A stretch of DNA of 64,000 nucleotides from Euprymna scolopes (Eukaryota). Numbering within the stretch: position 1 is the stretch's first letter; every line of letters begins with the position of its first letter. The position numbers and the translations under genes were made by a program. The stretch is taken from NCBI GenBank assembly GCA_053919585.1, contig CM132805.1, one strand, 5' to 3'. The notes beneath the pieces are model-generated. The model was not told the DNA's origin, searched no databases, and saw only the letters and a list, made by a program, of their open reading frames with translations. This document shows, piece by piece, positions 1 to 11,020 of this stretch.

Positions 1-125
1 TGTAATACTCAAGGAAGCAATGTGATCAGATAGTTTATGATCATGTGAGGTTGAATGTAATACCCAAAGAAGCAATGTGATCAGATAGTTTATGATCATG
101 TGAGGTTGAATATAATACTGAAGCT
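1..125. repeat. 55-bp tandem repeat, about 2.3 copies visible (may continue left of the window)
   Basis: 1-55 and 56-110 are near-identical (tgtaatacYcaaRgaagcaatgtgatcagatagtttatgatcatgtgaggttgaa). Confidence 0.85.
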
Positions 126-1470
126 GATAACTCCAATGAAAATGAAGAAGTCCGACCAATTTCTATTTGTAGGAATGCCCACAACAAACAACCACGTCCA
201 CAATGCCACATGTGTGATCTTGAGACCAGGAGGGAGTCTGGAGTTGAATGTGATAGTCAAAGAAGCAAGCGCCCACATGTGTGTGCCTTGTGTGGCTGTA
301 CAACTTACCTTCAGGTCGGATCTGATAGAGAGAGAGATTAAAGATAGCATCTGTGGCTTTATAAGGTGTGGTCTCATGGAATCGCACAGGATTGTACCGC
401 CCACTGCACACATATTCAAATAAAATGCCTGTTGGCAGAGGTAAGAGAGACAGACGCGTACTGGAAGTTGAGAGAGAAAATTGTGAGGAGGAGGAAATAC
501 AGTGACGAATTCTGTGAACTTTTGTTTTTGTTTTTTTTCGCCCATTTAACTGCAAATCAATAATGAAGCAAATAACGTAGCTTTCTGACAAAATGTTACG
601 TTTTGAAAATATTATATACTTTTTAAAGCAGTTAGATTTATTATATGCAAGCAAGAAAAGCAACAAGAATCATTGAATTAAGATCTCTTTAAAAATGTAT
701 ATATTAATATTACTTTCATATGTTAAATCCATTCAAATACAGTTAACATCTCGAATGGTTTGGCCATCCACCTCCTGCATCAACTCAGTAACATGTATGG
801 ATACCAGAGACACAATGATGTGTGGAAGATCAAGAAAATGATAACGACATTATTGCAATTCTGTACATTTTTCGACCTGGGCCATGTATTCCTTTTCTTT
901 TAAGCACATGCGTTAATGTGTTCTTCTAGTCAGCTCTTAACTTTTTTTCTATCCTCCATCATGTGGTTACGTTTAAAATAAATACATATTTATAGCATTC
1001 AAGTAAAAATGTCTGTGTGCATGCGTGTGTGTGCATGTGCGTGTGTGTGCATGCGCGTGTGTGCGCGAGTTTGTTCTCTATTGACTCCACGACAACTGGG
1101 CTGATTTTTATGAAATTTCACACAAAAGGTACTTTATATATCTGGCAGTAATTTTACATAGGTTTTGTACCGATAAGTATCGATAATCGAAAACTTCTGA
1201 TGAAAGAAGGAACAGGCGATTTCGTCCAAAGTTAACACCTTACACAGCCTAACATCACAAGTGCATTTGACAAGTTTTATTTTTCAATCAATCAATCAGA
1301 TCTTCTTGTTGGTCTTCTTTAATTGTTAGCATGGGTTAGCAAAGATGCAACTATTAGCTATTCTCTATCCATGCAATAGATTCATCATTCATACATTTTT
1401 AGTCGCGTGCAAGCGACTCTATAAGTCGGTCCGTTGGTCTGTCGGTTGGTCTGTCCGTAACACTTTTGTG

Positions 1471-1506
1471 CTTGGTCTTTTGGCCAAGATCAAAGTGTAG
1501 TATCTG
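1471..1506 (+). pseudogene. U2: U2 snRNA 5' fragment (stem I plus branch-point recognition region), copy 1
   Basis: cttggtcttttggccaagatcaaagtgtagtatctg versus U2 CTCGGCCTTTTGGCTAAGATCAA(A)GTGTAGTATCTG; no downstream U2 body or Sm site. Confidence 0.9.
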
Positions 1507-1712
1507 CCGGAACAGATACTGCAAGCAAAGACCATATGTGGGGGAAGCCCCACATATAAGACCTTGGTCAATGTAGGGGCAACCCTTCATACCAATTGTC
1601 ACTATCCAGCTCCCCTACTCCTCGGGGAGTTGCTCCCCATTTTCCCCTTCACTCCTCACATTAAAAATCGGTCTTGTGCTTAATTTGCTCAGTTGGGGAG
1701 CAAATAAATACT

Positions 1713-1745
1713 GCTTTTCTTGGCCTTTTGGCCGAGATCAAAGTG
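1713..1745 (+). pseudogene. U2: U2 snRNA 5' fragment, copy 2
   Basis: gcttttcttggccttttggccgagatcaaagtg matches U2 nt ~4-34; U2 sequence resumes at 1968-1987 and again at 8963-8984. Confidence 0.9.
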
Positions 1746-1967
1746 GGAGTTAAGTAGGACGTCCCCAAATATGAAAGGGTGAATGCGGTATTATGGTGAA
1801 AGAAGATACTAGCTGGGAGAAACTTTTGACTTTGTTTAGTTCTGGAGTGACAAGGATGACCAATGACCCCTAAAAATCCCCCCTTTTGAGTTGGCCATGT
1901 GCCTAAGTTTTTTGTTCATCGTTGATTTTGACTGTATTTTTTAACATGAATAAAAAATTTAATATCT
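1744..1967 (+). mobile_element. Short copy of the Tx1 element 3' tail (5'-truncated insertion or SINE-like unit) in the U2 site
   Basis: About 90% identical by eye to 8743-8962, contains AATAAA near 1949, and is flanked by duplicated tcaaagtg. Confidence 0.8.
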
Positions 1968-2360
1968 CAAAGTGTAGTATCTGTTCTGATACATACACCG
2001 CGCAAGGTAGTGCTGTTCTGGCAACACATTCTCGTGCCCGGAACACCTAACGAGCTTGATGGGTAGCGTTCTGTCCGCACCTCCACTTGGTCTGTCTTTC
2101 TCTGCTCTCCCCCCTCATGGGGAGGATCCGAGCTGATAATTTACGACCTTCCCGCGAGGGAGGGTCAGAAACACCTTCTCTCTTCCCTCCACTAACTTCC
2201 CACTCCCTCTCTCAGTTCCATCTCTCCTCTTGCCGCCTTTTGGCGCCACTTCTTTTTGGCGCCAAAGTCGGCTCCCCACTTTGGACGCTGACTCCACGTC
2301 ACTCTTTTCAGTGATTTTTTTTAAAAGAGGGAACCAAAACCCCAGCCCAGGCGCCACCAA

Positions 2361-4885
2361 TATGGATACCCCCAGCCAGGGAGCTACTGCTCCCCAAGAG
2401 GACGACTCCCCAACAGGAGAAAAAACAACCGCTGACGAGGTGTACCGCCCGGATATGACAGCATTGGTCGCTCCCCAGGAGGGGGAAAATTTAACAACAG
2501 CTCCTCCCGAGGGCGACTCCCCCCCCACAAAGGGTAGCAAAACCAAAATCGGTCGTAGCATCTCACTCCAACCATAAAAAGGAGGAGGTGCCAGACCAAA
2601 AGGAGAATAAAGGGGACAGCGCTCCCCAGGAGGGCTGCTCTCCCAAAAGGGGAGCAGATCAAGAAAATGAGGGGGCATACCGCCTGGACCTCACAAACGA
2701 GGAAGGGGTAGATGGCCTCAAAGTAAACAAAAAAGATCATGCTCCCCAAGAGGCCGACTCCCCAAAACGGGAAGCTGCTCCCGAAAAAGACTAACCAAGG
2801 AGAATCAGGCCCAAAAGACACTAAAAAGGGAACCACCCCCCCAAAAATGTGACACTCCTACAAAAGGACAGACCAAGAAATCTGGGGAGGCAGGAAGCGT
2901 CGCCAATAAACAGGCAGGGGCGACCTCCATAAAAGACCAAAAACAGTCTAACCCCACCAAAGACCCCATACCAACACCACCAAGAGGGTCTGCGTGGGGG
3001 AAGACCGTAGAAAAACAACTGTCCCCTCAAGAGTATAGAGACCTGTACCTGACAAAGTACGGACAATACATAGAGAGGGCAGATATAAAACCCATACCAG
3101 GTGCCTGGGAGGCGGTTAAGGGCAGAGTCCTGTCCTTTGCCATTTCCGATATACCAGAAAACCGCCTCCTGGGGATGAAGTAGGAAGACATGGCGGGGCT
3201 CCTCCACAAACTTAACATCCAGGTACTATACCTGTACCAGAGGAGCTTCGCCGTGTGGGACATCCTCCTACCCACCAAGGACGATGCGGAGAGACTCTCC
3301 CTCCAAGAAATAAAGCATGGGAGAGTCAAACTAATACCCGAATACCAGGGCAAGAGAAGGATTCGGGTGCAGGTATTTAATGTGCCAACCCAAATACCTG
3401 CGGAAGTGTTAGGATGCCTCTTCAGCCAATACGGTGAGGTGGAACAGGTGACCCCAGTACGGTAAAAAACTGGGACTCACCTGGTCTGCTACACAATAGC
3501 AGTGAGGCTGAAGAGGGAGGGTGTTCGAGCGATACCACCGCTGCTTACATATAAAGACGCCAGCATAACAGTAGTGGTGGAGGGCCGTCGTCCACACTGC
3601 TGGTTCTGCCAAAAGCAGGGCCACATGGCTAGGAGCTGCCCCCAAAGGGTAACCCCTAATCAAACAACCCAAAAGGTAATCACAACCCCTGAGACAGTGC
3701 CCACGCCAAAACAGGCGGCAACAACCCCTGCAACTGCAGCACCAACCCCAGCTCCAAGGAAAACCCAAGCCACCCAGGAGGCCAAGGGGGAAGAATGGAG
3801 CACGATAGTGAGACAAAAACGGAAGCACATAATCCTTTCTGCCACCGTCCCAAAAATCGAGGCAGCAGCCTCTGCAAATGCAGCAACAACAACAGCCACC
3901 GCAGCCAATGCCGCGGAAACAACTGCAGCAACAACAATTACCGCAGCAGCAAAAGCAGCAGCAGCAACGACACCAGCGAGAGCAGCAGCAACAAAAACAG
4001 CTGCAGCAGCAACTAGAGGAGTAGACACAACCAACGGTCTCCACACAAATCGAGACGGGGATCAAGCAGAGAAAAGACTGCTCCTCTGAGGATGAATCCG
4101 CAAGTGAGAGGGAGAGGAACTCAACTTCACCTCTCCCCGGTTCATTGGAAAGAATAAAAAAGAAAAACAAAAGAAGAAAAGAGGAAGAAAAGGTGGCCCC
4201 CCCACTCCCTGTGAACATACACCACCCCTAACAACAAAATCCACCTCCACCCCCCAAACCACACACTGCACCAACACCAAACACCGCACCAACACCAGAC
4301 ACCGCACCAACAACAAACATGGCACCAACACCAGACACCGCACCAACATCAGACACCGCACAAACACCCGTCCCCACACCAATGCAAACTGAGCCACCAC
4401 CCCAAAAAGAAGAGGAAAAGAATGAACCGAGGTAGGAGTGAGACTCCTCTGCCTCTCGCAGATCAACCAGATTAAAAGTCCTTGCCCCTGAGGAACTATG
4501 CTATGTAGACCCTCTATTTGTGGCCACAGACATTTCCCATCGGCAGAGGAAAAACTTAAAACCTCTGCTCGATTACAAACAGATAGAGAGGAAAGATGTA
4601 AATATCCTCTCAAATTTTCCGGACGCCCCACTCCTAATAACATTTGTCAGAACTCCAGAGGCCTGCAAGACCAACTTGTGGACAAGGCTGCAGGCCGCTG
4701 AAGGGGCGTTTCCGGGAATCAAACTGGTGAAAAAAAATGACCCTTCTCTTGACGAACTGTCAAAACAATACAAGGGAAGGGTCCCAGTGTTGGTCCATCC
4801 GTCACTCTACAGGGCCATAAAATTAATTTATCCTTTGGACGTCGGCGGCATTGCTGACTTTGGAGCTGAGTGTGACACACCCTAA
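2361..4885 (+). pseudogene. Tx1 ORF1 (gag-like nucleic-acid-binding protein), disrupted by stops and frameshifts
   Basis: APQExxSP repeats (2385-2770), RRM-like segment RIRVQVFNVPTQIPAEVL..LFSQYGEV, zinc knuckle CWFCQKQGHMARSC (3598-3639), Ala/Thr-rich tract, 18-bp repeats at about 4265-4385. Confidence 0.75.
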
Positions 4886-4895
4886 GGTAGGTACC

Positions 4896-7800
4896 ATGGC
4901 TTTGAATTTGGCTAGTTTGAATGCAAGGGGCTTGAGATCATCGGGCCGGGCGGCTCGCCTCCGGCACGACCTCTTGTCCCTGGGAGTGGATGTGATTCAG
5001 GAAACGCATTTCGTTTCCTCTGTGGACTGTCAGGTGCTGGCCCGAGATTTTGAGGTTTTCTCAGCATATGGCAGCCCGCGGGGGAAGGGAGTTTCCGTGC
5101 TAGTTAAACGTACCCTGTCGGCGACAGTCGACGTTGTCCATAGAGATGCGGTGGGAAGGCTGGTTGTGGCCGATGTTGCCGTAAAAGATTCTGTGTTTCA
5201 GGTGATCGCGGTTCATGCGTCTAGCACCGCTTGTGAGAGGGTCTCATTCTTCAGTCAGCTTGACGCGTTTGTAGATTGTCGGAAGCGGGTAGTGCTAATG
5301 GGAGATTGGAACGCCATCTTAGACCCTGAGATAGATAAGGTAGGAGGCGATGCTAGAGGATCGGAGAGGTGCGAGTCCAGTCTGGCTGATCTGATGGCTA
5401 GATGTGGTCTGGTTGACAGGTTTCGGGCTGAGCATCCGGGGCGGGAGATGTGGACATGGACCAATAGTGTTTCGTCTGATCCAAACACTTACTTGGAAAG
5501 GATGTTAGTTAGGAGAGGCGAAGTGGACTTCTTATCTTGTCCCACGTTCACTTGGCTAGGCCAGACAGATCATAAACTAGTTATGGCCCGGCTGAAGCTA
5601 GGAAATAGGCCTAAGTTAGTGGCTCACTGGAAGTTAAACACTTCCCTTCTGGAGATACAAGACTTCCAAGAGAAGCTAATAGAATTAATTCAAAAAGCAC
5701 TAGTGGGGGCGGTTACTGGGAGTAAGTGGTGGGTAGATTAGAACTTTCTCCATCAAGTATGCCCAGCACCTCGCACTAGATAAGGCCAAGACGAAGAAGA
5801 AGCTAGAACAGAAAGCCCGGGCTACGGGGGAGGGTTATAGGGTTAGTCAGGAACTAGCTAAGCAGGACCTTCTGCGTGAGAATAGTGAGCGTTATGAAGG
5901 TCAAGTAGTCAGAGCTAGGCTTAGAAAGGTAAGCAATGAAGCAGTCAACTCCAACACTGACACACGTCATGAAATTTCTAGGCGTGGCTTGGACAAGTGC
6001 ATTGCAAAGGTAAGACATCCAGATGGACACACCCTTGAATCAACTCGGGAGATCTGCAAGGGGTTTTGAGAACATTTTGAGGAGCGTTTTACGCAGCAGC
6101 CCGATCTTCCGGTCCTTGAGTTTAGCAACTATTTGGCCGACTCTCCCCGCTTCGAGGCGGCTAGAGCGGCTAGTTGCGAGGGCCAGGTGATGGAGCGGGA
6201 GGTTTTCACTGCGCTGAAGCAGGTCAGCTGTGACAGATCGCCGGGACTCGATGGTCTGCCATACAAACTCTATTTGAGGCTGTCGCCCATGTTTCTGCCT
6301 CTTCTGACGGATGTGTTCAACCATTGGTTTGCTCAGGGATCCATCCCAGGGCAACTCACCAAGGGAGTGATCACATTGCTGAGGAAAGGTGACGGGCATG
6401 GTGGGGAAGAGCTAGACGATTACAGGCCCATAACTCTGCTAAACACAGAGTTGAAGATTTTGGCCAAGGTCCTGTCGAATCGGCTGCAGGTTGTTATCGG
6501 CGAGTTGGTTGAACCGGAACAGAACTACGCTGTGGAGGGGAGATCGATTCAGAACAACTTGCACCTGATCCGCATGATCCTAGAGGGAAGGATAGATGAC
6601 GACACGGAAGCCACGCTGATCAACTTAGATCAATCTAAAGCTTTCGATAGGGTCGACCATCGTTTCTTGGCATCTGTCTTAGAGGCCGCCGGTTTTAAAC
6701 CGGACTTCTGCAAGTGGATCTCCGCAATGTATCGACAGCCCACAGCCGTCGTGCAAGTCAACGGAAAGCACTTGAAACCCTTTGTTATCTCTCGGTCGGT
6801 TCGTCAGGGTTGTCCGCTGTCGCCCCTGCTCTATGTCCTGGCTTTGGAGCCCCTGCTCCGCAAGCTGAGACGTGGCAGAATTGCAATACCCGGTGGCTCA
6901 GCCGCCAAGGTATCCGCGTTCACCGATGATGTCATGGTCTTTGTGTCGAGCATCAGAGACATCGAGATCATGTCGGAGGCGCTCGCTCAGTATGAAAGAA
7001 TTACAGGGACCCAGATAAACTGCAGCAAGTCGGTAGGACTGCAGTTGGGCGCCTGGAGTTGCAACACCAACCTCCCGGCGCCCTTCAGCTGGAAAGATGG
7101 CCCGGTTCGGATCCTCGGCGTGTGGTTCGGACCGGGTCTCCAGTTTGACAAAAATTGGTTGGAGGTACGGTCAAAAGTGGAGGCTGCAGTCAATTCGTGG
7201 CTTCCTAGGAAACTATCCTTAAAGGGTAGAGCTGAGGCGTGCATCACTTAGGTCTTTCCTCTCATCCTTTACCGACTAGCCGTACTTCCCCTGCCTGCAC
7301 AACACCTAACAGCTCTTGTCGAACTCTTGTCCTCGCTTCTTTGGGACAGAGGAAAACACTGGGTGAGCAGACAGGTCTGTATTCAACGTCTGTGTGAGGG
7401 AGGCTTGGGAATGCTATACTTGAAGTGTCATCAAGACGCTGAGAGGCTGGCCTTCCTGATCCACTATATGCAAAATGACCAACCGTGACACCCCGTGGTT
7501 ACTGCTGCCTTCTCCGACCTCGTTCTCGACCCTTCTATCGAGAGCCATCGCAGGCCGCGGGGAGAATCTGCCTACATGAAAGAGTGCTGAGCCGCGCTAA
7601 AACGACTACCAAGGTCCAGCGACCTTGTGACTGCTACCCGTAGGGAACTCCACAGGGATCTAGTGAGGGGGGCTGCTGATGACCCACTGTGCGCGCGTTT
7701 GGGTTGGCAGCAGAGTGAGATCCGCTCCGCGTGGAGCTGGGCGCCAGGTTCGAGTCATCTGAACAATTTGGAGTTCTCTCTGACCTGGCGATTGGCCTGA

Positions 7801-8292
7801 AATGCACTTCCACTTAACAATGTACAATGCAGTTCCGGGTTTTTGGAGTCACCTGATTGTCCCCGTTGTGGGACAACGGGCGTAGAAACGACTGATCATG
7901 CTTTCTTCGATTGCCGCGAACTCCACCGGTACTGGTCGTATGTCAGTGAGGTCACGGCTCGCATCGATCCTGAGCATCCTCGCCCAATTACTGTATTAAA
8001 TGTCGTGGACAACGTGAGGCCACCGTGGGACCAGGAAAGACATGGTCTACGTTACAATCCTGGCCGTGGCGAGAATGGTGATTTGGACGTCGCGTCTGCA
8101 AGATTGCCGGGGGGGGGAGGGTTGTCTTTTTCTGATCAGGATCTGATCGCTTTCTTTAAACACCAACTACGGGTGAAGATCAGATGTGATAGGAGAAGGC
8201 TGCATCGCACTGCATTTGACAGAAGATGGATACATGTGGCAAGTCTGTGTGTACGAAGAGGAGCCAAATTTGAATACGTGTTCCCCGCCTAG
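4896..8292 (+). pseudogene. Tx1 ORF2: AP-endonuclease, reverse transcriptase and C-terminal zinc finger, with several stops
   Basis: SLNARGL, IQETH, MGDWN, TDH (APE); SPGLDGLP, YRPITLLNTELKI, LDQSKAFDRVDH, SVRQGCPLSPLLY, FTDD (RT); CPRC..ETTDHAFFDC. Confidence 0.93.
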
Positions 8293-11020
8293 GTGTGGAA
8301 CGCGCAGTTCCGTAAAGTAAAATTTAACAAATAGCCTCTCAGCTAGCTGAGTGTGTGTTCCATCCCTCCCTGATTAGGAAGCCTGCAAGATCCCCACCCC
8401 CTCTTTCTTGCAATTTTTGTTTTCACCCCCTCCTCTAAACTTCACTCATCTTGGAGAGAAAGAAATACAAACTAACCCTCATTCCTTACCCACAAAATTT
8501 TCTTTTCTCCATTCACCCCCATCTAGAGGGCATCCCCACTTAGAGGCTGACCCGCAGAAGCCAGGTTCCTTTTACAAACCTAGTGGAACGGGCAGTCTAT
8601 CAACTAGACGGGTTGGGAGGGTCCTACTAATCGCCCCCTGCCCCCCCTTTCCCCCCCCCGTCCTCGACACAAATGAATTACTGTACCTTTTTTATTGTTA
8701 TCTTTTTTGTTTTTACACGTCAATAAAAAATGTTTTAAAAATTGGGAGTTAAGTAGGATGTCTGCCAGTATGAAAGGGTGAATGCGGTATTATGGTGAAA
8801 GATACTCGCTGGGAGAAACTTTTGATTTTGTTTAGTTCTGGAGTGACAAGGATGACCAACGACACCCACAATCCCCACCTTTTGAGTTGGCCATGTGCCT
8901 AAGTTTTTTGTTCATTATTGATTTTCAATGTATTTTTAACATGAATAAAGGATTTAATATCCCAAAGTGTAGTATCTGTTCTTACTACATGCTGTACTTA
9001 TGTTTGTAACTTTGTGATATAAAGTGGGGGATCACTTTTCTCTATTAATTTGATGTAAAATGATCACTCACTTTACAACCAGTCAGTCTCAACGTCATTC
9101 AAGTCATTCTCCAGATCATTCAAGTTGTTTTGGAAAGATTCAAGTTATTTTTTAAGCATTCAAGTCATTCTTAAGGTCATTCAATTCATCCTTAAGTTCA
9201 TTAAAGTCATTCTAAGTCATTTACTTTTTATTTATTTAAGTCATTTCAGCCCATTTTTCGGTCATTTTAGTTTATCTTTAAGAATTTCATGTCAATCCTA
9301 CATTCACGCATTCATTCATTACACGAGAGCACGGCCTTGTTTTTGAGTAAAATAGAAATTAAATATTTTTTATTGTGTTGTGGTCTAGAATTTAAAAAAT
9401 TGCAATCTTTAAATGAATATGGGGAAATGTTCAATTTATAATAGAATAATTATAAATTGGACATTTCCCATAATGTATTCTATAATGAATTTAACTAAAA
9501 CAAAAGCTTTTTATATTGCCATGACCTCAGCTAAAAATCGATATAGACATTCTTTTTACTTTAAATGCAATGAAAAATAAATTGCTTTTATGTATAGAAT
9601 GTTTATTCAACAGTCATAATATTTTCATAAAAATTGATTTGCCGTTTTGGCAATTTCTTTAAATATGCTTTAGATCAACCAGAAGAAAAATTATTTTTAC
9701 GTTGTCTTTGGTCAGTTTTTATTTAATTTTAAAACTTTTCACAAATATTATCATGTCGTCATTTTTACAATAGTTGACTTTTTTATTAAAATACTAGCAA
9801 GATATGTGCTCGAGTGTTGCCCAGGAAAATTAAGGAAACAAAGAATGGCAACCCCAAGAAATAAATTGACTGGAAAAACATTTTACATCAAAACTCCCAA
9901 GATTTGTAGAGGGTGAACTCACCCTCTATTGTTTGCAGTGGAATAATTTAAAAGGGTCGCTTGGTCCTCTAGGCCAAGAATGAATATACGAATATGCCAA
10001 GATTATAATTTACAACCAATGTACATTTATTTACAGAGATTGTTACAAGAGTAATGAAAAATAGTTCAATTCTGAAGAAGCATAAGAAAACATGACTTGC
10101 GTAGTAATTCTGAGAGTCTCTTTGCGGGAGTGCAAATGTTTTTTGCGAAGGTGCAGTACAGGAGCATGGTGTGACGTGTTTGCATACTTTGGCATCCAAA
10201 TCAAACAAGAGGGTGAGAAATATCAAGTGAATAGGGAAGTAAGGTGTTAATGCCACCTTGCAGCAAAGAATGATATTAAAGGGCGATAATTAGGTTTATT
10301 TTAATGTTACAGGTTTGTGTTCATGGATAGAGAGCGGTACAGGAAGTAGTAGAAAATGCCACCTGTTGAATAAATCTATAGAGACAAGGGCAATCAACTG
10401 GTGCGTAATTGAGATACATTTGTGTGCATGTGTGCGTGGCATATCTAATAGCATATCAGTCTGAAAAGCATCTGCCCATAGACTTTATATAAAATATATT
10501 TGTAAATAGAATTAAAGTTTATAGTAAACTAAAAACAATCATTGAATTAGAAAACAATAAAAATGAGTAGTTAATTAATGACATATGCTTTTTCAAAGCA
10601 ATACCCAAATTAGCTAATCTTACATACATTATAAGAATATTAGTTGTAGTGAATGTATTTTTAATATGAATTTGGTGTTTTAATCTCACTATGAATGTGA
10701 TAAATTTTATAAATAAATGAGATTATTACCCTTTATTAACTTTAAGTTTGAATTGTGGCCCAAAGATATTGGGGTCGACTTCAAGATTATATATTCAGTT
10801 TTGCTTCATAAAGATTGTCTGGAAGTCAAGATGGCTGCCGTACAAACGTGTGACTAAAGATTAAAATATGTTGAAAATTTTAAATAAAAAATCTACTTGT
10901 TTTTCATTCAAATTTGCAATAATGGTCAACACAAAAAATGACAACATGAATTGTGAAAAATGTTGAAAATCAAATTAAAAAGTGGAAACATAACACACAA
11001 ATATGAAAAATATTTCTCAA

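What the first reader, a model, noticed from the sequence alone, without database searches (positions are those of the whole stretch)
1397..9341. Portable U2 landing pad: a Helentron-like element carries a U2 5' fragment that is repeatedly hit by a U2-specific retrotransposon
Seen: U2 sequence occurs four times (1471, 1713, 1968, 8963) but never extends past about nt 49, has no Sm site, and directly follows a DINE/HINE-type 5' end; HINE-type internal repeats and terminus follow the last copy. Known: Keno (Tx1 clade) and Utopia elements insert site-specifically in U2 genes. Inference: a non-autonomous rolling-circle element captured the target site and may spread decoy or safe-haven sites, letting a site-specific retrotransposon multiply, and perhaps hitch-hike, without disrupting real U2 genes.
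Basis: partly seen in the sequence, partly recalled or inferred. Interest (0 to 1): 0.85.

Follow-up and report, generated by a model that had tools for sequence, protein, structure and literature searches.

The report
Rolling-circle transposon carrying a U2 landing pad
A short DNA transposon present about 6,000 times in this mollusc genome carries the first ~46 bases of U2 spliceosomal RNA, and U2-homing retrotransposons keep inserting into that borrowed piece instead of into the real U2 genes.

Summary
Window 1397-9341 is one copy of a high-copy non-autonomous Helentron-type element (HINE). It has 12-nt subterminal inverted repeats, T-run ends, no target-site duplication, a (GGTC)n tract and 21-nt central repeats.

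Its interior always contains U2 snRNA nt 4-49: 5,598 pad/3'-arm junctions, 6,237 5' termini and 0 padless junctions genome-wide.

In the window this pad was hit three times, always in sense orientation:
- a U2-headed SINE-like unit;
- a 5'-truncated LINE copy;
- a dead full-length 7-kb APE+RT LINE ('KenoW') with a perfect 20-bp duplication of U2 nt 28-47.

In 59 other copies the pad content differs almost every time, so the hits are independent.

LINE 3' ends of this type abut the HINE pad 734 times and SINE U2 heads 4,917 times. They abut a genuine U2 continuation only 6 times, although there are about 1,190 real-type U2 copies. Related intact LINEs do sit in the real 764-bp U2 array.

Not shown: that the HINE captured the piece from a gene, any decoy benefit, hitch-hiking of live elements, or Tx1/Keno clade membership. 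HINE pads are a minority, roughly 15%, of non-genic U2 pads.

The scan had already met the SINE/LINE part of this system on other DNA of this genome.

The parts
1397..1469 (+). HINE 5' arm. T-run start (T at 1396-1400, exact boundary ambiguous); 5' subterminal inverted repeat TTAGTCGCGTGC at 1399-1410; nested palindrome AGTCGC..GCGACT at 1401-1418; (GGTC)n-like tract at ~1427-1459.
   Evidence: 6,237 genome matches to the 31-nt terminus. Flanks of 38 complete copies: T before the element in 36, no target-site duplication. 12-nt inverted repeat with the 3' arm.
1470..1506 (+). HINE-borne landing pad, left part: U2 nt 4-43. HINE-type variant: GCTTGG with a 3-nt deletion, C at nt 22.
   Evidence: The same pad type directly follows the 5' arm in L002, L004 and L005.
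1507..1712 (+). Body and tail of a SINE-like non-autonomous unit ('SINEa'). It starts with a hairpin that completes GTATCTG..CAGATAC and ends ..GCAAATAAATAC(T). It contains the 3'UTR box shared with the LINEs.
   Evidence: 30,711 genome matches to the head-body junction. Units in 40+ of 59 HINE loci with many different 5' truncation points. Box comparison. No significant similarity to the U2 3' half.
1713..1745 (+). Second U2 piece (nt ~4-34) of the retroelement-associated type GCTTTTCTTGG, following the SINEa tail.
   Evidence: In other copies this post-tail U2 starts at nt 1-3 (ATCGC/CGC), which the HINE pad lacks.
1746..1966 (+). 5'-truncated copy (last ~220 nt) of the LINE family 'KenoW', ending ..TTTAATATC.
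   Evidence: 89-91% identical to 8741-8961.
1967..1987 (+). U2 nt 27-47. This is the downstream flank of the truncated copy and the upstream flank of the full-length copy. 1968-1987 is the left copy of the 20-bp duplication.
1988..8961 (+). Full-length but dead non-LTR retrotransposon 'KenoW' (6,974 nt). ORF1 remnants with a CCHC knuckle at ~2362-4885; ORF2 in pieces: APE 4851-5741, RT 6133-7251, zf-RVT 7843-8292.
   Evidence: Pfam. ORF list shows frame changes and stops. 116 genome copies of this 5' junction. 4,549 of the 3' tail+U2 junction. Dozens of dispersed relatives with a 1,170-aa open frame.
8962..8984 (+). Landing pad, right part: U2 nt 27-49 (nt 27 mutated to C). 8963-8982 is the right copy of the 20-bp duplication.
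   Evidence: 734 genome copies of tail|U2 27-49|HINE 3' arm.
8985..9341 (+). HINE 3' arm. 19-nt hairpin near its start; 21-nt tandem repeats at 9081-9221; remnant of the 3' subterminal repeat (GCACG at 9329-9333); 16-nt deletion at 9333/9334; terminal GCCTTGTT at 9334-9341.
   Evidence: 96-97% identical to 40 scored copies out of 1,263 first-look candidates. Full 3' end read in 29 loci. Tandem repeats.

Best explanation
A non-autonomous Helentron-type rolling-circle transposon (HINE) carries U2 snRNA nt 4-49 as a fixed internal segment. It has spread to about 6,000 T-rich sites on all chromosomes.

That 46-nt segment contains everything the genome's U2-site-specific APE-type LINEs need to cut and prime. 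These LINEs nick the bottom strand before U2 nt 1, 22 or 27, depending on family, and the top strand after nt 47. Every HINE copy is therefore a gene-free target.

LINEs and their U2-headed SINE-like dependants insert there by target-primed reverse transcription, always in the sense orientation. Each insertion duplicates or brings in 20-47 nt of U2, which leaves usable targets on its flanks. Pads are therefore hit again and grow into stacks such as 1397-9341.

Shown: the anatomy, the copy numbers, the independence of the hits, and the depletion in real U2 genes.

Inferred: rolling-circle mobilisation, the nick positions (deduced from junctions), and that the pad acts passively. It is an accidentally acquired fragment, not an adaptation.
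For: HINE features:
- 12-nt subterminal inverted repeats.
- Nested 5' palindrome, microsatellite and 21-nt central repeats.
- T-run ends, 5' flank T in 36 of 38 copies, no target-site duplication.
- These match the criteria in PMC4067079.
- Rolling-circle Rep genes are abundant, many with open frames of about 1,500-1,600 aa.

The pad is constitutive:
- All 59 sampled copies have it.
- 5,598 pad/3'-arm junctions against 6,237 5' termini and 0 padless junctions.

The hits are independent:
- The content between the arms differs in nearly every copy.
- KenoW pieces start at 9 or more different positions and KenoA pieces at 5.
- SINEa units number from 0 to more than 8, with many truncation points.
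- All are in sense orientation.
- 22 of 27 independent copies from the 3'-arm sample carry at least one such insertion.

Site specificity:
- 13 of 14 perfect KenoW 3'UTR ends on contig C1 are followed by a perfect tail+U2 nt 27-37.

The same kind of element uses real U2 genes:
- KenoA and KenoB, with intact ORF1 and ORF2, interrupt the 764-bp array with the same 5' junction after nt 47.

Depletion in genes (ATATC-tail junctions per target):
- SINE heads 4,917/30,711 = 0.16.
- HINE pads 734/5,598 = 0.13.
- Real U2 6/1,189 = 0.005.
Against: - No autonomous Helentron with these termini was linked to the family.
- The 3' terminal stem-loop expected of HINEs is not convincing (z = -0.36).
- The origin of the pad is open. 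The pad and the SINE heads share C at nt 22, whereas all real U2 genes seen have T. The pad's extent nearly equals the U2 head carried by the retroelements.
- Depletion in real genes may reflect purging by selection or array homogenisation rather than target choice.
- SINE heads, not HINE pads, are the commonest target.
- Only about one fifth of SINEa units seem to lie in HINEs. This is a rough estimate.
Confidence: 0.75

Rival explanations
1. The pad was not captured from a U2 gene. It is the left-over U2 'head' of a U2-headed retroelement that once inserted into an ancestral, padless HINE. The retroelement system made its own foothold, and the HINE merely amplified it.
For: The pad (nt 4-49) is nearly co-extensive with the U2 head carried by the SINEs and LINEs (nt 1-46/47). 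The pad and the SINE heads share the derived C at nt 22, whereas array U2 and variant U2 genes have T. No U2 promoter or flank sequence accompanies the pad.
Against: No retroelement body or tail adjoins the pad in empty copies (L005). No similarity between the 3' arm and any LINE or SINE part except one 11-mer. The pad runs 2 nt past the usual head end and has its own 3-nt deletion. No padless relatives were found.
Confidence: 0.3
2. The nests were mostly not built by repeated hits. One or a few HINE copies that already contained retroelement pieces were multiplied by HINE transposition or by segmental duplication.
For: The major HINE subfamily has an inherited internal duplication: a degenerate first pad plus about 35 nt, with the same junctions in most copies. 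L067, L068 and L069 are identical composites with identical flanks, so they are segmental duplicates. The architecture pad-SINEa-pad recurs in 9 or more loci.
Against: Truncation points, numbers and families of inserts differ in nearly every copy at different loci. Recurrence of one architecture is expected for a site-specific full-length insertion.
Confidence: 0.1
3. The HINE-borne U2 fragments are an adaptation: either a host or HINE 'decoy' that protects U2 genes, or a retrotransposon 'safe haven' favoured by selection.
For: Non-genic pads outnumber real U2 copies by about 30 to 1. Per-target occupancy is about 30-fold lower in real genes.
Against: The same numbers follow from passive dilution plus removal of insertions from an essential tandem array. 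Related intact LINEs still occupy about 5% of the array units inspected. Nothing here measures fitness.
Confidence: 0.1
4. The host repeat is not a Helentron derivative but another kind of repeat, such as a tandem-repeat-containing MITE or a SINE, that happens to have short inverted repeats.
For: The 3' hairpin is weak. No autonomous partner was tied to it. The last 11 nt resemble the retroelements' 3'UTR box.
Against: No target-site duplication in 38 copies. Asymmetric ends with T-runs and T-flank preference. Subterminal rather than terminal inverted repeats with a nested 5' palindrome. Microsatellite plus central repeats, exactly the DINE-1/HINE layout.
Confidence: 0.08

Closest known systems
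Tx1-Mar LINEs and SINEU elements inserted in the DNA transposon Mariner-N4_AMi of crocodilians (Kojima 2015, PMC4494074)
   Same: Keno-related, APE-type, target-specific LINEs live together with short elements that have U2-derived heads. They pile up in tandem inside one family of non-autonomous DNA transposon, and insertions were shown to be independent by 5'-truncated copies.
   Different: In the passages read, the Mariner target (TSD AGGTTCCCATCAGCAT) is not presented as U2-derived. The two preferred Mariner regions are said to share no recognisable similarity with each other. Here the DNA transposon physically carries U2 nt 4-49 and is cut at the same U2 positions as the real genes. The carrier is a rolling-circle element rather than a Mariner, the host is a mollusc, and the tails are not poly(A).
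Tx1L inserted in Tx1D in Xenopus laevis (composite elements; cited in PMC4494074)
   Same: The founding member of the clade is a site-specific LINE whose only target lies inside a non-autonomous DNA transposon.
   Different: From my own knowledge, not checked here, no gene-derived target in Tx1D is known. The present case shows a gene fragment as the target inside the transposon. It could be the kind of intermediate by which such a switch arises.
Keno (APE-type) and Utopia (restriction-like endonuclease) U2-gene-specific LINEs (PMC4640811)
   Same: Specific insertion in the conserved 5' 50 nt of U2, in sense orientation, sometimes with 20-bp duplications and tandem insertions. The paper also reports YURE elements inserting into a U2-derived satellite in Ciona, so a non-genic U2 copy as a target has a precedent.
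   Different: In that paper the downstream U2 starts at nt 39 in the Phytophthora Utopia insertions, and Keno is said to share the same 3' flank. Here it starts at nt 1, 22 or 27. The paper calls U2 a poor, low-copy target. Here the target has been multiplied about 30-fold by mobile carriers. RT phylogeny was not done here.
DINE-1 / HINE non-autonomous Helentrons (Thomas et al. 2014, PMC4067079; oyster HINEs, PMC7492417)
   Same: Subterminal inverted repeats of 11-13 nt, a nested 5' inverted repeat, a microsatellite, central tandem repeats, T-run termini, TT-type insertion without duplication, and very high copy number.
   Different: No snRNA fragment or retrotransposon target is mentioned in PMC4067079 (0 occurrences of 'snRNA'). 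None turned up in three literature searches. The 3' stem-loop is weak here.

Membership tests
HINE (non-autonomous Helentron; criteria of PMC4067079) | Subterminal inverted repeats of at least 11 nt | tested here: met
   TTAGTCGCGTGC at nt 3-14 of the element and GCACGCGACTAA about 20 nt from the 3' end. Perfect in the family consensus, 11 of 12 in L074. The window copy has lost the 3' one through a 16-nt deletion.
HINE (non-autonomous Helentron; criteria of PMC4067079) | Short inverted repeat or palindrome nested in or next to the 5' subterminal repeat | tested here: met
   AGTCGC-GTGCAA-GCGACT at window 1401-1418. The 5' end folds well above shuffles (z = -4.8).
HINE (non-autonomous Helentron; criteria of PMC4067079) | Insertion at T/TT with T-runs at the ends and no target-site duplication | tested here: met
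   38 complete copies start TTTT and end TTGTT. 36 have T just upstream. Flanks are unrelated. No paralogous empty sites were examined.
HINE (non-autonomous Helentron; criteria of PMC4067079) | Stem-loop (palindrome) at the 3' end after the 3' subterminal repeat | tested here: inconclusive
   Only a 3-bp GGC..GCC stem is possible. Folding of the last 43 nt is no better than shuffles (z = -0.36).
HINE (non-autonomous Helentron; criteria of PMC4067079) | Central tandem repeats and/or a microsatellite | tested here: met
   21-nt unit x 6.9 at 9081-9221. (GGTC)n of variable length in the 5' arm.
HINE (non-autonomous Helentron; criteria of PMC4067079) | An autonomous Helentron partner with the same termini | not tested
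   Rep (PF14214) genes are abundant and many are open.
Keno / Tx1 clade of non-LTR retrotransposons | APE-type endonuclease + RT ORF2, with an ORF1 carrying CCHC knuckle(s) | tested here: met
   Exo_endo_phos, RVT_1, zf-RVT and zf-CCHC in the window pieces and in the intact KenoA and KenoB copies.
Keno / Tx1 clade of non-LTR retrotransposons | Specific insertion into U2 snRNA sequence | tested here: met
   4,549 tail+U2 junctions. 13 of 14 perfect 3'UTR ends on C1 are followed by U2 nt 27-37. Relatives sit in the real array.
Keno / Tx1 clade of non-LTR retrotransposons | Same insertion site as published Keno/Utopia (downstream U2 starts at about nt 39) | tested here: not met
   Downstream U2 starts at nt 27 (KenoW), nt 22 (KenoA) or nt 1 (KenoB, SINEa). 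The 5' junction is after nt 46-47, compared with PMC4640811.
Keno / Tx1 clade of non-LTR retrotransposons | RT phylogeny places it within the Tx1 clade, next to Keno | not testable with these tools
   No named reference sequences were obtainable. The 77 homologues found carry no telling names.
SINEU-like (SINE with snRNA-derived head; PMC4494074) | 5' head derived from U2, body unrelated, 3' tail shared with a partner LINE | tested here: met
   Head = U2 nt 1-46. Body not similar to the U2 3' half. The 3'UTR box GGCCTTGTGCCTAA is shared with KenoW, KenoA and KenoB by inspection of the printed 3' ends; no alignment statistic was computed. The ..AAATAC tail resembles that of KenoB.
SINEU-like (SINE with snRNA-derived head; PMC4494074) | Poly(A) tail, and descent from the crocodilian SINEU families | tested here: not met
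   The tail is ..GCAAATAAATAC, with no poly(A). The host is a mollusc. This is an analogue, not a member.

The most novel reading that the evidence does not exclude
This HINE is a living example of how a gene-specific LINE lineage escapes its gene. Once a DNA transposon acquires the target sequence, it seeds gene-free targets at thousands of new loci, and the LINE/SINE community moves onto them. From there it can lose its dependence on the gene altogether. This is the missing intermediate behind Tx1L-in-Tx1D and Tx1-Mar-in-Mariner. A stronger version holds that the HINE is the vehicle that founded most dispersed U2 nests in this genome.
Probability: 0.35. Interest if true: 0.8.

Novelty: new variant of a known kind. 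Interest (0 to 1): 0.66.

Why it matters
Site-specific retrotransposons are usually thought to be limited by the copy number of their target. The Utopia/Keno paper (PMC4640811) calls U2 a poor, low-copy target.

Here the limit has been lifted. A rolling-circle DNA transposon, together with the retroelements' own U2 heads, has multiplied the target about 30-fold and scattered it over all chromosomes. The LINE family found in the window now sits almost wholly outside the genes.

This gives a concrete, sequence-level route for a long-noted oddity of the Tx1 clade: some members target small-RNA genes while close relatives target DNA transposons.

It also provides a natural experiment on target choice versus post-insertion purging. 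The same 46-nt target exists in genic and non-genic contexts in the same nucleus.

Tried and rejected
- **Rfam U2 on the whole genome.** The search failed three times. It was replaced by pattern searches.
- **SINEa as an internally deleted U2.** cmscan aligned 1464-1588 to the full U2 model, which suggested a derivative like SINEU-3. A local alignment of the body to U2 nt 48-193 is not better than shuffles (84 of 500 reach the score). Rejected.
- **3' arm as the 5' UTR of a LINE captured with a U2 head.** There is no similarity to KenoW, KenoA, KenoB or SINEa beyond 11-15-mers. Rejected.
- **KenoB 3' end as a copy of the U2 promoter region.** The best local match, CCCCA..TGAGGG, is not significant (140 of 500 shuffles). 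Not supported.
- **Context of related LINEs in other assemblies.** One record had no DNA. Two relatives (L085, L086) are flanked by a different, non-U2 sequence, so they say nothing about HINE pads elsewhere.
- **Naming the clade through homologues.** The hits carry no telling names.
- **Internal 3'UTR pattern as a denominator for site specificity.** It proved subfamily-specific (1,740 hits). It was used only for the C1 cross-check.
- **Reads.** None were laid, because the nest (7.9 kb) exceeds the 6,000-letter limit needed to see an empty-site joint.
- **Complex prediction and structure prediction.** Neither was relevant.


Full report
**What is in the window**

Coordinates below use this genome's own U2 numbering. 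That was read from a 764-bp tandem array on G000:C9, where a pattern for U2 nt 35-68 finds 1,189 copies genome-wide. The stretch 1397-9341 reads as follows:

| Window | Content |
|---|---|
| 1397-1469 | 5' arm of a repeat |
| 1470-1506 | U2 nt 4-43 |
| 1507-1712 | 206-nt unit ending ..GCAAATAAATAC(T) |
| 1713-1745 | U2 nt ~4-34 |
| 1746-1966 | last ~220 nt of a LINE |
| 1967-1987 | U2 nt 27-47 |
| 1988-8961 | the same LINE at full length |
| 8962-8984 | U2 nt 27-49 |
| 8985-9341 | 3' arm of the repeat |

The full-length LINE is flanked by a perfect 20-bp duplication of U2 nt 28-47. Its reading frames are broken. Pfam finds a CCHC knuckle, an AP-type endonuclease, a reverse transcriptase and zf-RVT in separate pieces and frames. 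No U2 piece passes nt 49. Rfam gives only sub-threshold U2 hits, as expected for fragments.

**The host repeat**

Searching the genome with the 5' arm plus U2, or with the 3' arm alone, returned more than 1,200-1,500 first-look candidates each. The scored 3' arms were 96-97% identical.

Reading 59 copies gave the full structure:
- a TTTT start;
- TTAGTCGCGTGC, with a nested palindrome AGTCGC..GCGACT;
- a variable (GGTC)n tract;
- the U2 piece;
- a 375-nt arm with 21-nt tandem repeats;
- GCACGCGACTAA, the exact inverted copy of the 5' motif;
- a ..GGCCTTGTT end.

In 38 complete copies there is no target-site duplication, and the base before the element is T in 36. These are the features by which Thomas et al. 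defined DINE-1/HINE non-autonomous Helentrons (PMC4067079).

Two items remain open. The 3' stem-loop is not convincing. No autonomous partner was tied to these ends, although Rep genes of rolling-circle transposons are very abundant and often open. The window copy has lost 16 nt, including most of the 3' inverted repeat.

**The U2 piece belongs to the family**

Every one of the 59 copies has it next to the 3' arm. Genome-wide counts, each allowing up to 3 mismatches and each with 0 hits for the reversed control, were:
- 5,598 junctions of U2 nt 34-49 with the 3' arm;
- 6,237 5' termini;
- 0 junctions of the 5' arm directly with the 3' arm.

The second criterion, that the two arms are unrelated repeats, is excluded by the inverted repeats and by complete copies such as L005. 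L005 is exactly the predicted empty element.

The major subfamily has an inherited internal duplication: a degenerate first pad and about 35 nt before the second pad. This is the only thing I saw being carried along by the HINE.

**The pad is hit repeatedly and independently**

I mapped the 59 copies against a small library. What lies between the two arms differs in almost every copy:
- from none to more than eight of the 206-nt units ('SINEa'), with 5' truncations at many positions;
- 3' pieces of the window's LINE ('KenoW') starting at nine or more different positions;
- pieces of a second LINE ('KenoA') starting at five different positions;
- at least one further family with a different tail (L010, L030).

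All are in the sense orientation of the U2 piece. In the sample drawn with the 3' arm alone, 22 of 27 independent copies carry at least one such insertion. Three identical composites (L067-L069) have identical flanks and are segmental duplicates.

**The retroelements are U2-specific and also use real genes**

Gaps of about 8 kb in the real array are LINEs about 70% identical to KenoW, with intact ORF1 and ORF2.
- KenoA is joined after U2 nt 47 and before nt 22.
- KenoB is joined after nt 47 and before nt 1, so a complete U2 sequence follows the element.

KenoW, KenoA, KenoB and SINEa share a 3'UTR box, GGCC(T/A)TGTGCCTAA. This was seen by inspecting the printed 3' ends; no alignment statistic was computed. 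SINEa and KenoB also share the ..AAATAC tail. SINEa is therefore best read as a non-autonomous dependant with a U2 nt 1-46 head. Its body is not U2-derived.

After SINEa tails the U2 copy often begins at nt 1-3. The HINE pad lacks those bases, so that copy comes from the retroelement RNA and not from the pad. Each such insertion thus adds a fresh target.

On contig C1, 13 of 14 perfect KenoW 3'UTR ends are followed by a perfect tail+U2 junction.

**Where the window's LINE family lives**

Junctions of the ATATC tail with U2 nt 27 onward, by what follows:

| Context | Junctions | Targets of that kind | Per target |
|---|---|---|---|
| SINE body (LINE sits in a SINE's U2 head) | 4,917 | 30,711 | 0.16 |
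| HINE 3' arm | 734 | 5,598 | 0.13 |
| Genuine U2 continuation | 6 | 1,189 | 0.005 |

There are 116 copies of the full-length 5' junction. Dozens of dispersed relatives carry a 1,170-aa open frame. None of the 110 scored lies in the C9 array, and some are in tandem at about 7.4 kb.

The family therefore thrives outside the genes. Whether the 30-fold deficit in genes is due to target choice (pads have C, genes T, at nt 22) or to purging cannot be decided here.

**How large is the HINE's role?**

HINE pads are about 15% of the non-genic U2 targets counted. Two rough estimates put about one fifth of SINEa units inside HINEs:
- about 1.2 units per HINE in the sampled loci;
- 7 of 100 SINEa sites on C1 lying next to a perfect-match HINE end, with about 36% detection.

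The HINE is a real and sizeable carrier, but not the only one.

**Origin of the pad**

This is unresolved. Direct capture is typical of rolling-circle elements. Against that, the pad's extent nearly equals the retroelements' U2 head, and it shares C22 with them. I give the 'left-over head' rival 0.3.

**Comparison with what is known**

- The nearest described system is crocodilian Tx1-Mar plus SINEU in Mariner-N4_AMi (PMC4494074).
- Next is Tx1L in Tx1D.
- The Utopia paper also reports YURE elements in a U2-derived satellite, and it calls U2 a poor low-copy target (PMC4640811).

I found no report of a Helitron or Helentron carrying an snRNA target. The library searched is incomplete.

Membership of Keno or Tx1 is not established. 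The domain set and the U2 specificity fit. The 3' junction sites differ from the published one, and no phylogeny was possible.

**Earlier notes of this scan**

The scan has met the U2-headed SINE plus LINE system before on other DNA of this genome. Two follow-ups exist (s1-295483, s1-279846). One first-reader note elsewhere gives the same three-tier HINE idea (s1-241397). My counts agree with the self-targeting picture and add the HINE layer quantitatively.

**Limits**

- All genome-wide figures are pattern counts with up to 3 mismatches, so they are lower bounds.
- The organism name is coded. Runs labelled 'mollusc metagenome' hold the flank.

Noticed in passing
L052-L054 (G000:C9 real U2 array): The LINE 'KenoB' sits as U2(1-47) | element | complete U2(1-193), so its insertion leaves a whole U2 coding copy downstream. 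In two of three copies the upstream 47-nt piece differs from the array sequence (GGTCAAG instead of GGCTAAG). The element's 3' end shows no significant similarity to the native U2 upstream spacer.
   Followed up: partly
window 1700-1720; L004, L020 and others: The U2 copy that follows SINEa tails often begins at U2 nt 1-3 (ATCGC or CGC). The HINE pad starts at nt 4 and lacks these bases. That U2 copy must therefore be templated by the retroelement RNA (a head or read-through) rather than being a duplication of the pad.
   Followed up: partly
window 9326-9341 versus 1668-1690; L060 3' end: The HINE's last bases (ATCGGCCTTGT) share an 11-mer with the SINEa version of the 3'UTR box conserved in the LINEs. 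Chance is about 0.02 for sequences of these lengths. Unexplained.
   Followed up: no
pads and SINE heads in L001-L084 versus L031-L054: HINE pads and SINE heads have C at U2 nt 22 (GGCCAAG). The array U2 and three dispersed variant U2 genes have T (GGCTAAG or GGCTTAG). This could mark common descent of pads and heads, or a target preference.
   Followed up: no
L031-L033 (G000:C2:12.08 Mb, C4:166.59 and 166.61 Mb): Dispersed full-length U2 variant genes, 81-87% identical to the array U2. They have their own flanks and a shared downstream AAAAACAGACT box.
   Followed up: no
L085 (ENA ERZ26693861) and L086 (JGI 3300030226): LINEs with 58-61% ORF2 identity to KenoB lack any U2 flank in both loci. 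In L085 the sequence ACACCTGTGAACTGCGTGTCTT is seen on both sides. This looks like a sister lineage with another specific target.
   Followed up: partly
ENA ERZ21867824, 31.5-kb contig (no DNA served): Head-to-tail array of full-length relatives (ORF1 718 aa + ORF2 1,155 aa) with a period of about 6.82 kb. Similar tandems of about 7.4 kb occur in this genome, for example three on C18 near 103.11-103.14 Mb.
   Followed up: no
window 4235-4396: An 18-nt tandem repeat (about 9 copies) lies inside the ORF1 remnant of the LINE, encoding a Pro/Thr-rich repeat.
   Followed up: no
window 9422-9469: A 21-nt inverted repeat (95% complementary, 6-nt loop) lies just downstream of the HINE. It gives a weak sub-threshold mir-310 hit (24.6 bits against a cut-off of 48).
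   Followed up: no
window 1-110 and 1005-1071: A 55-nt direct repeat (2 copies, 96% identical) at the window start, and a (GT/GC)-rich microsatellite upstream of the HINE.
   Followed up: no
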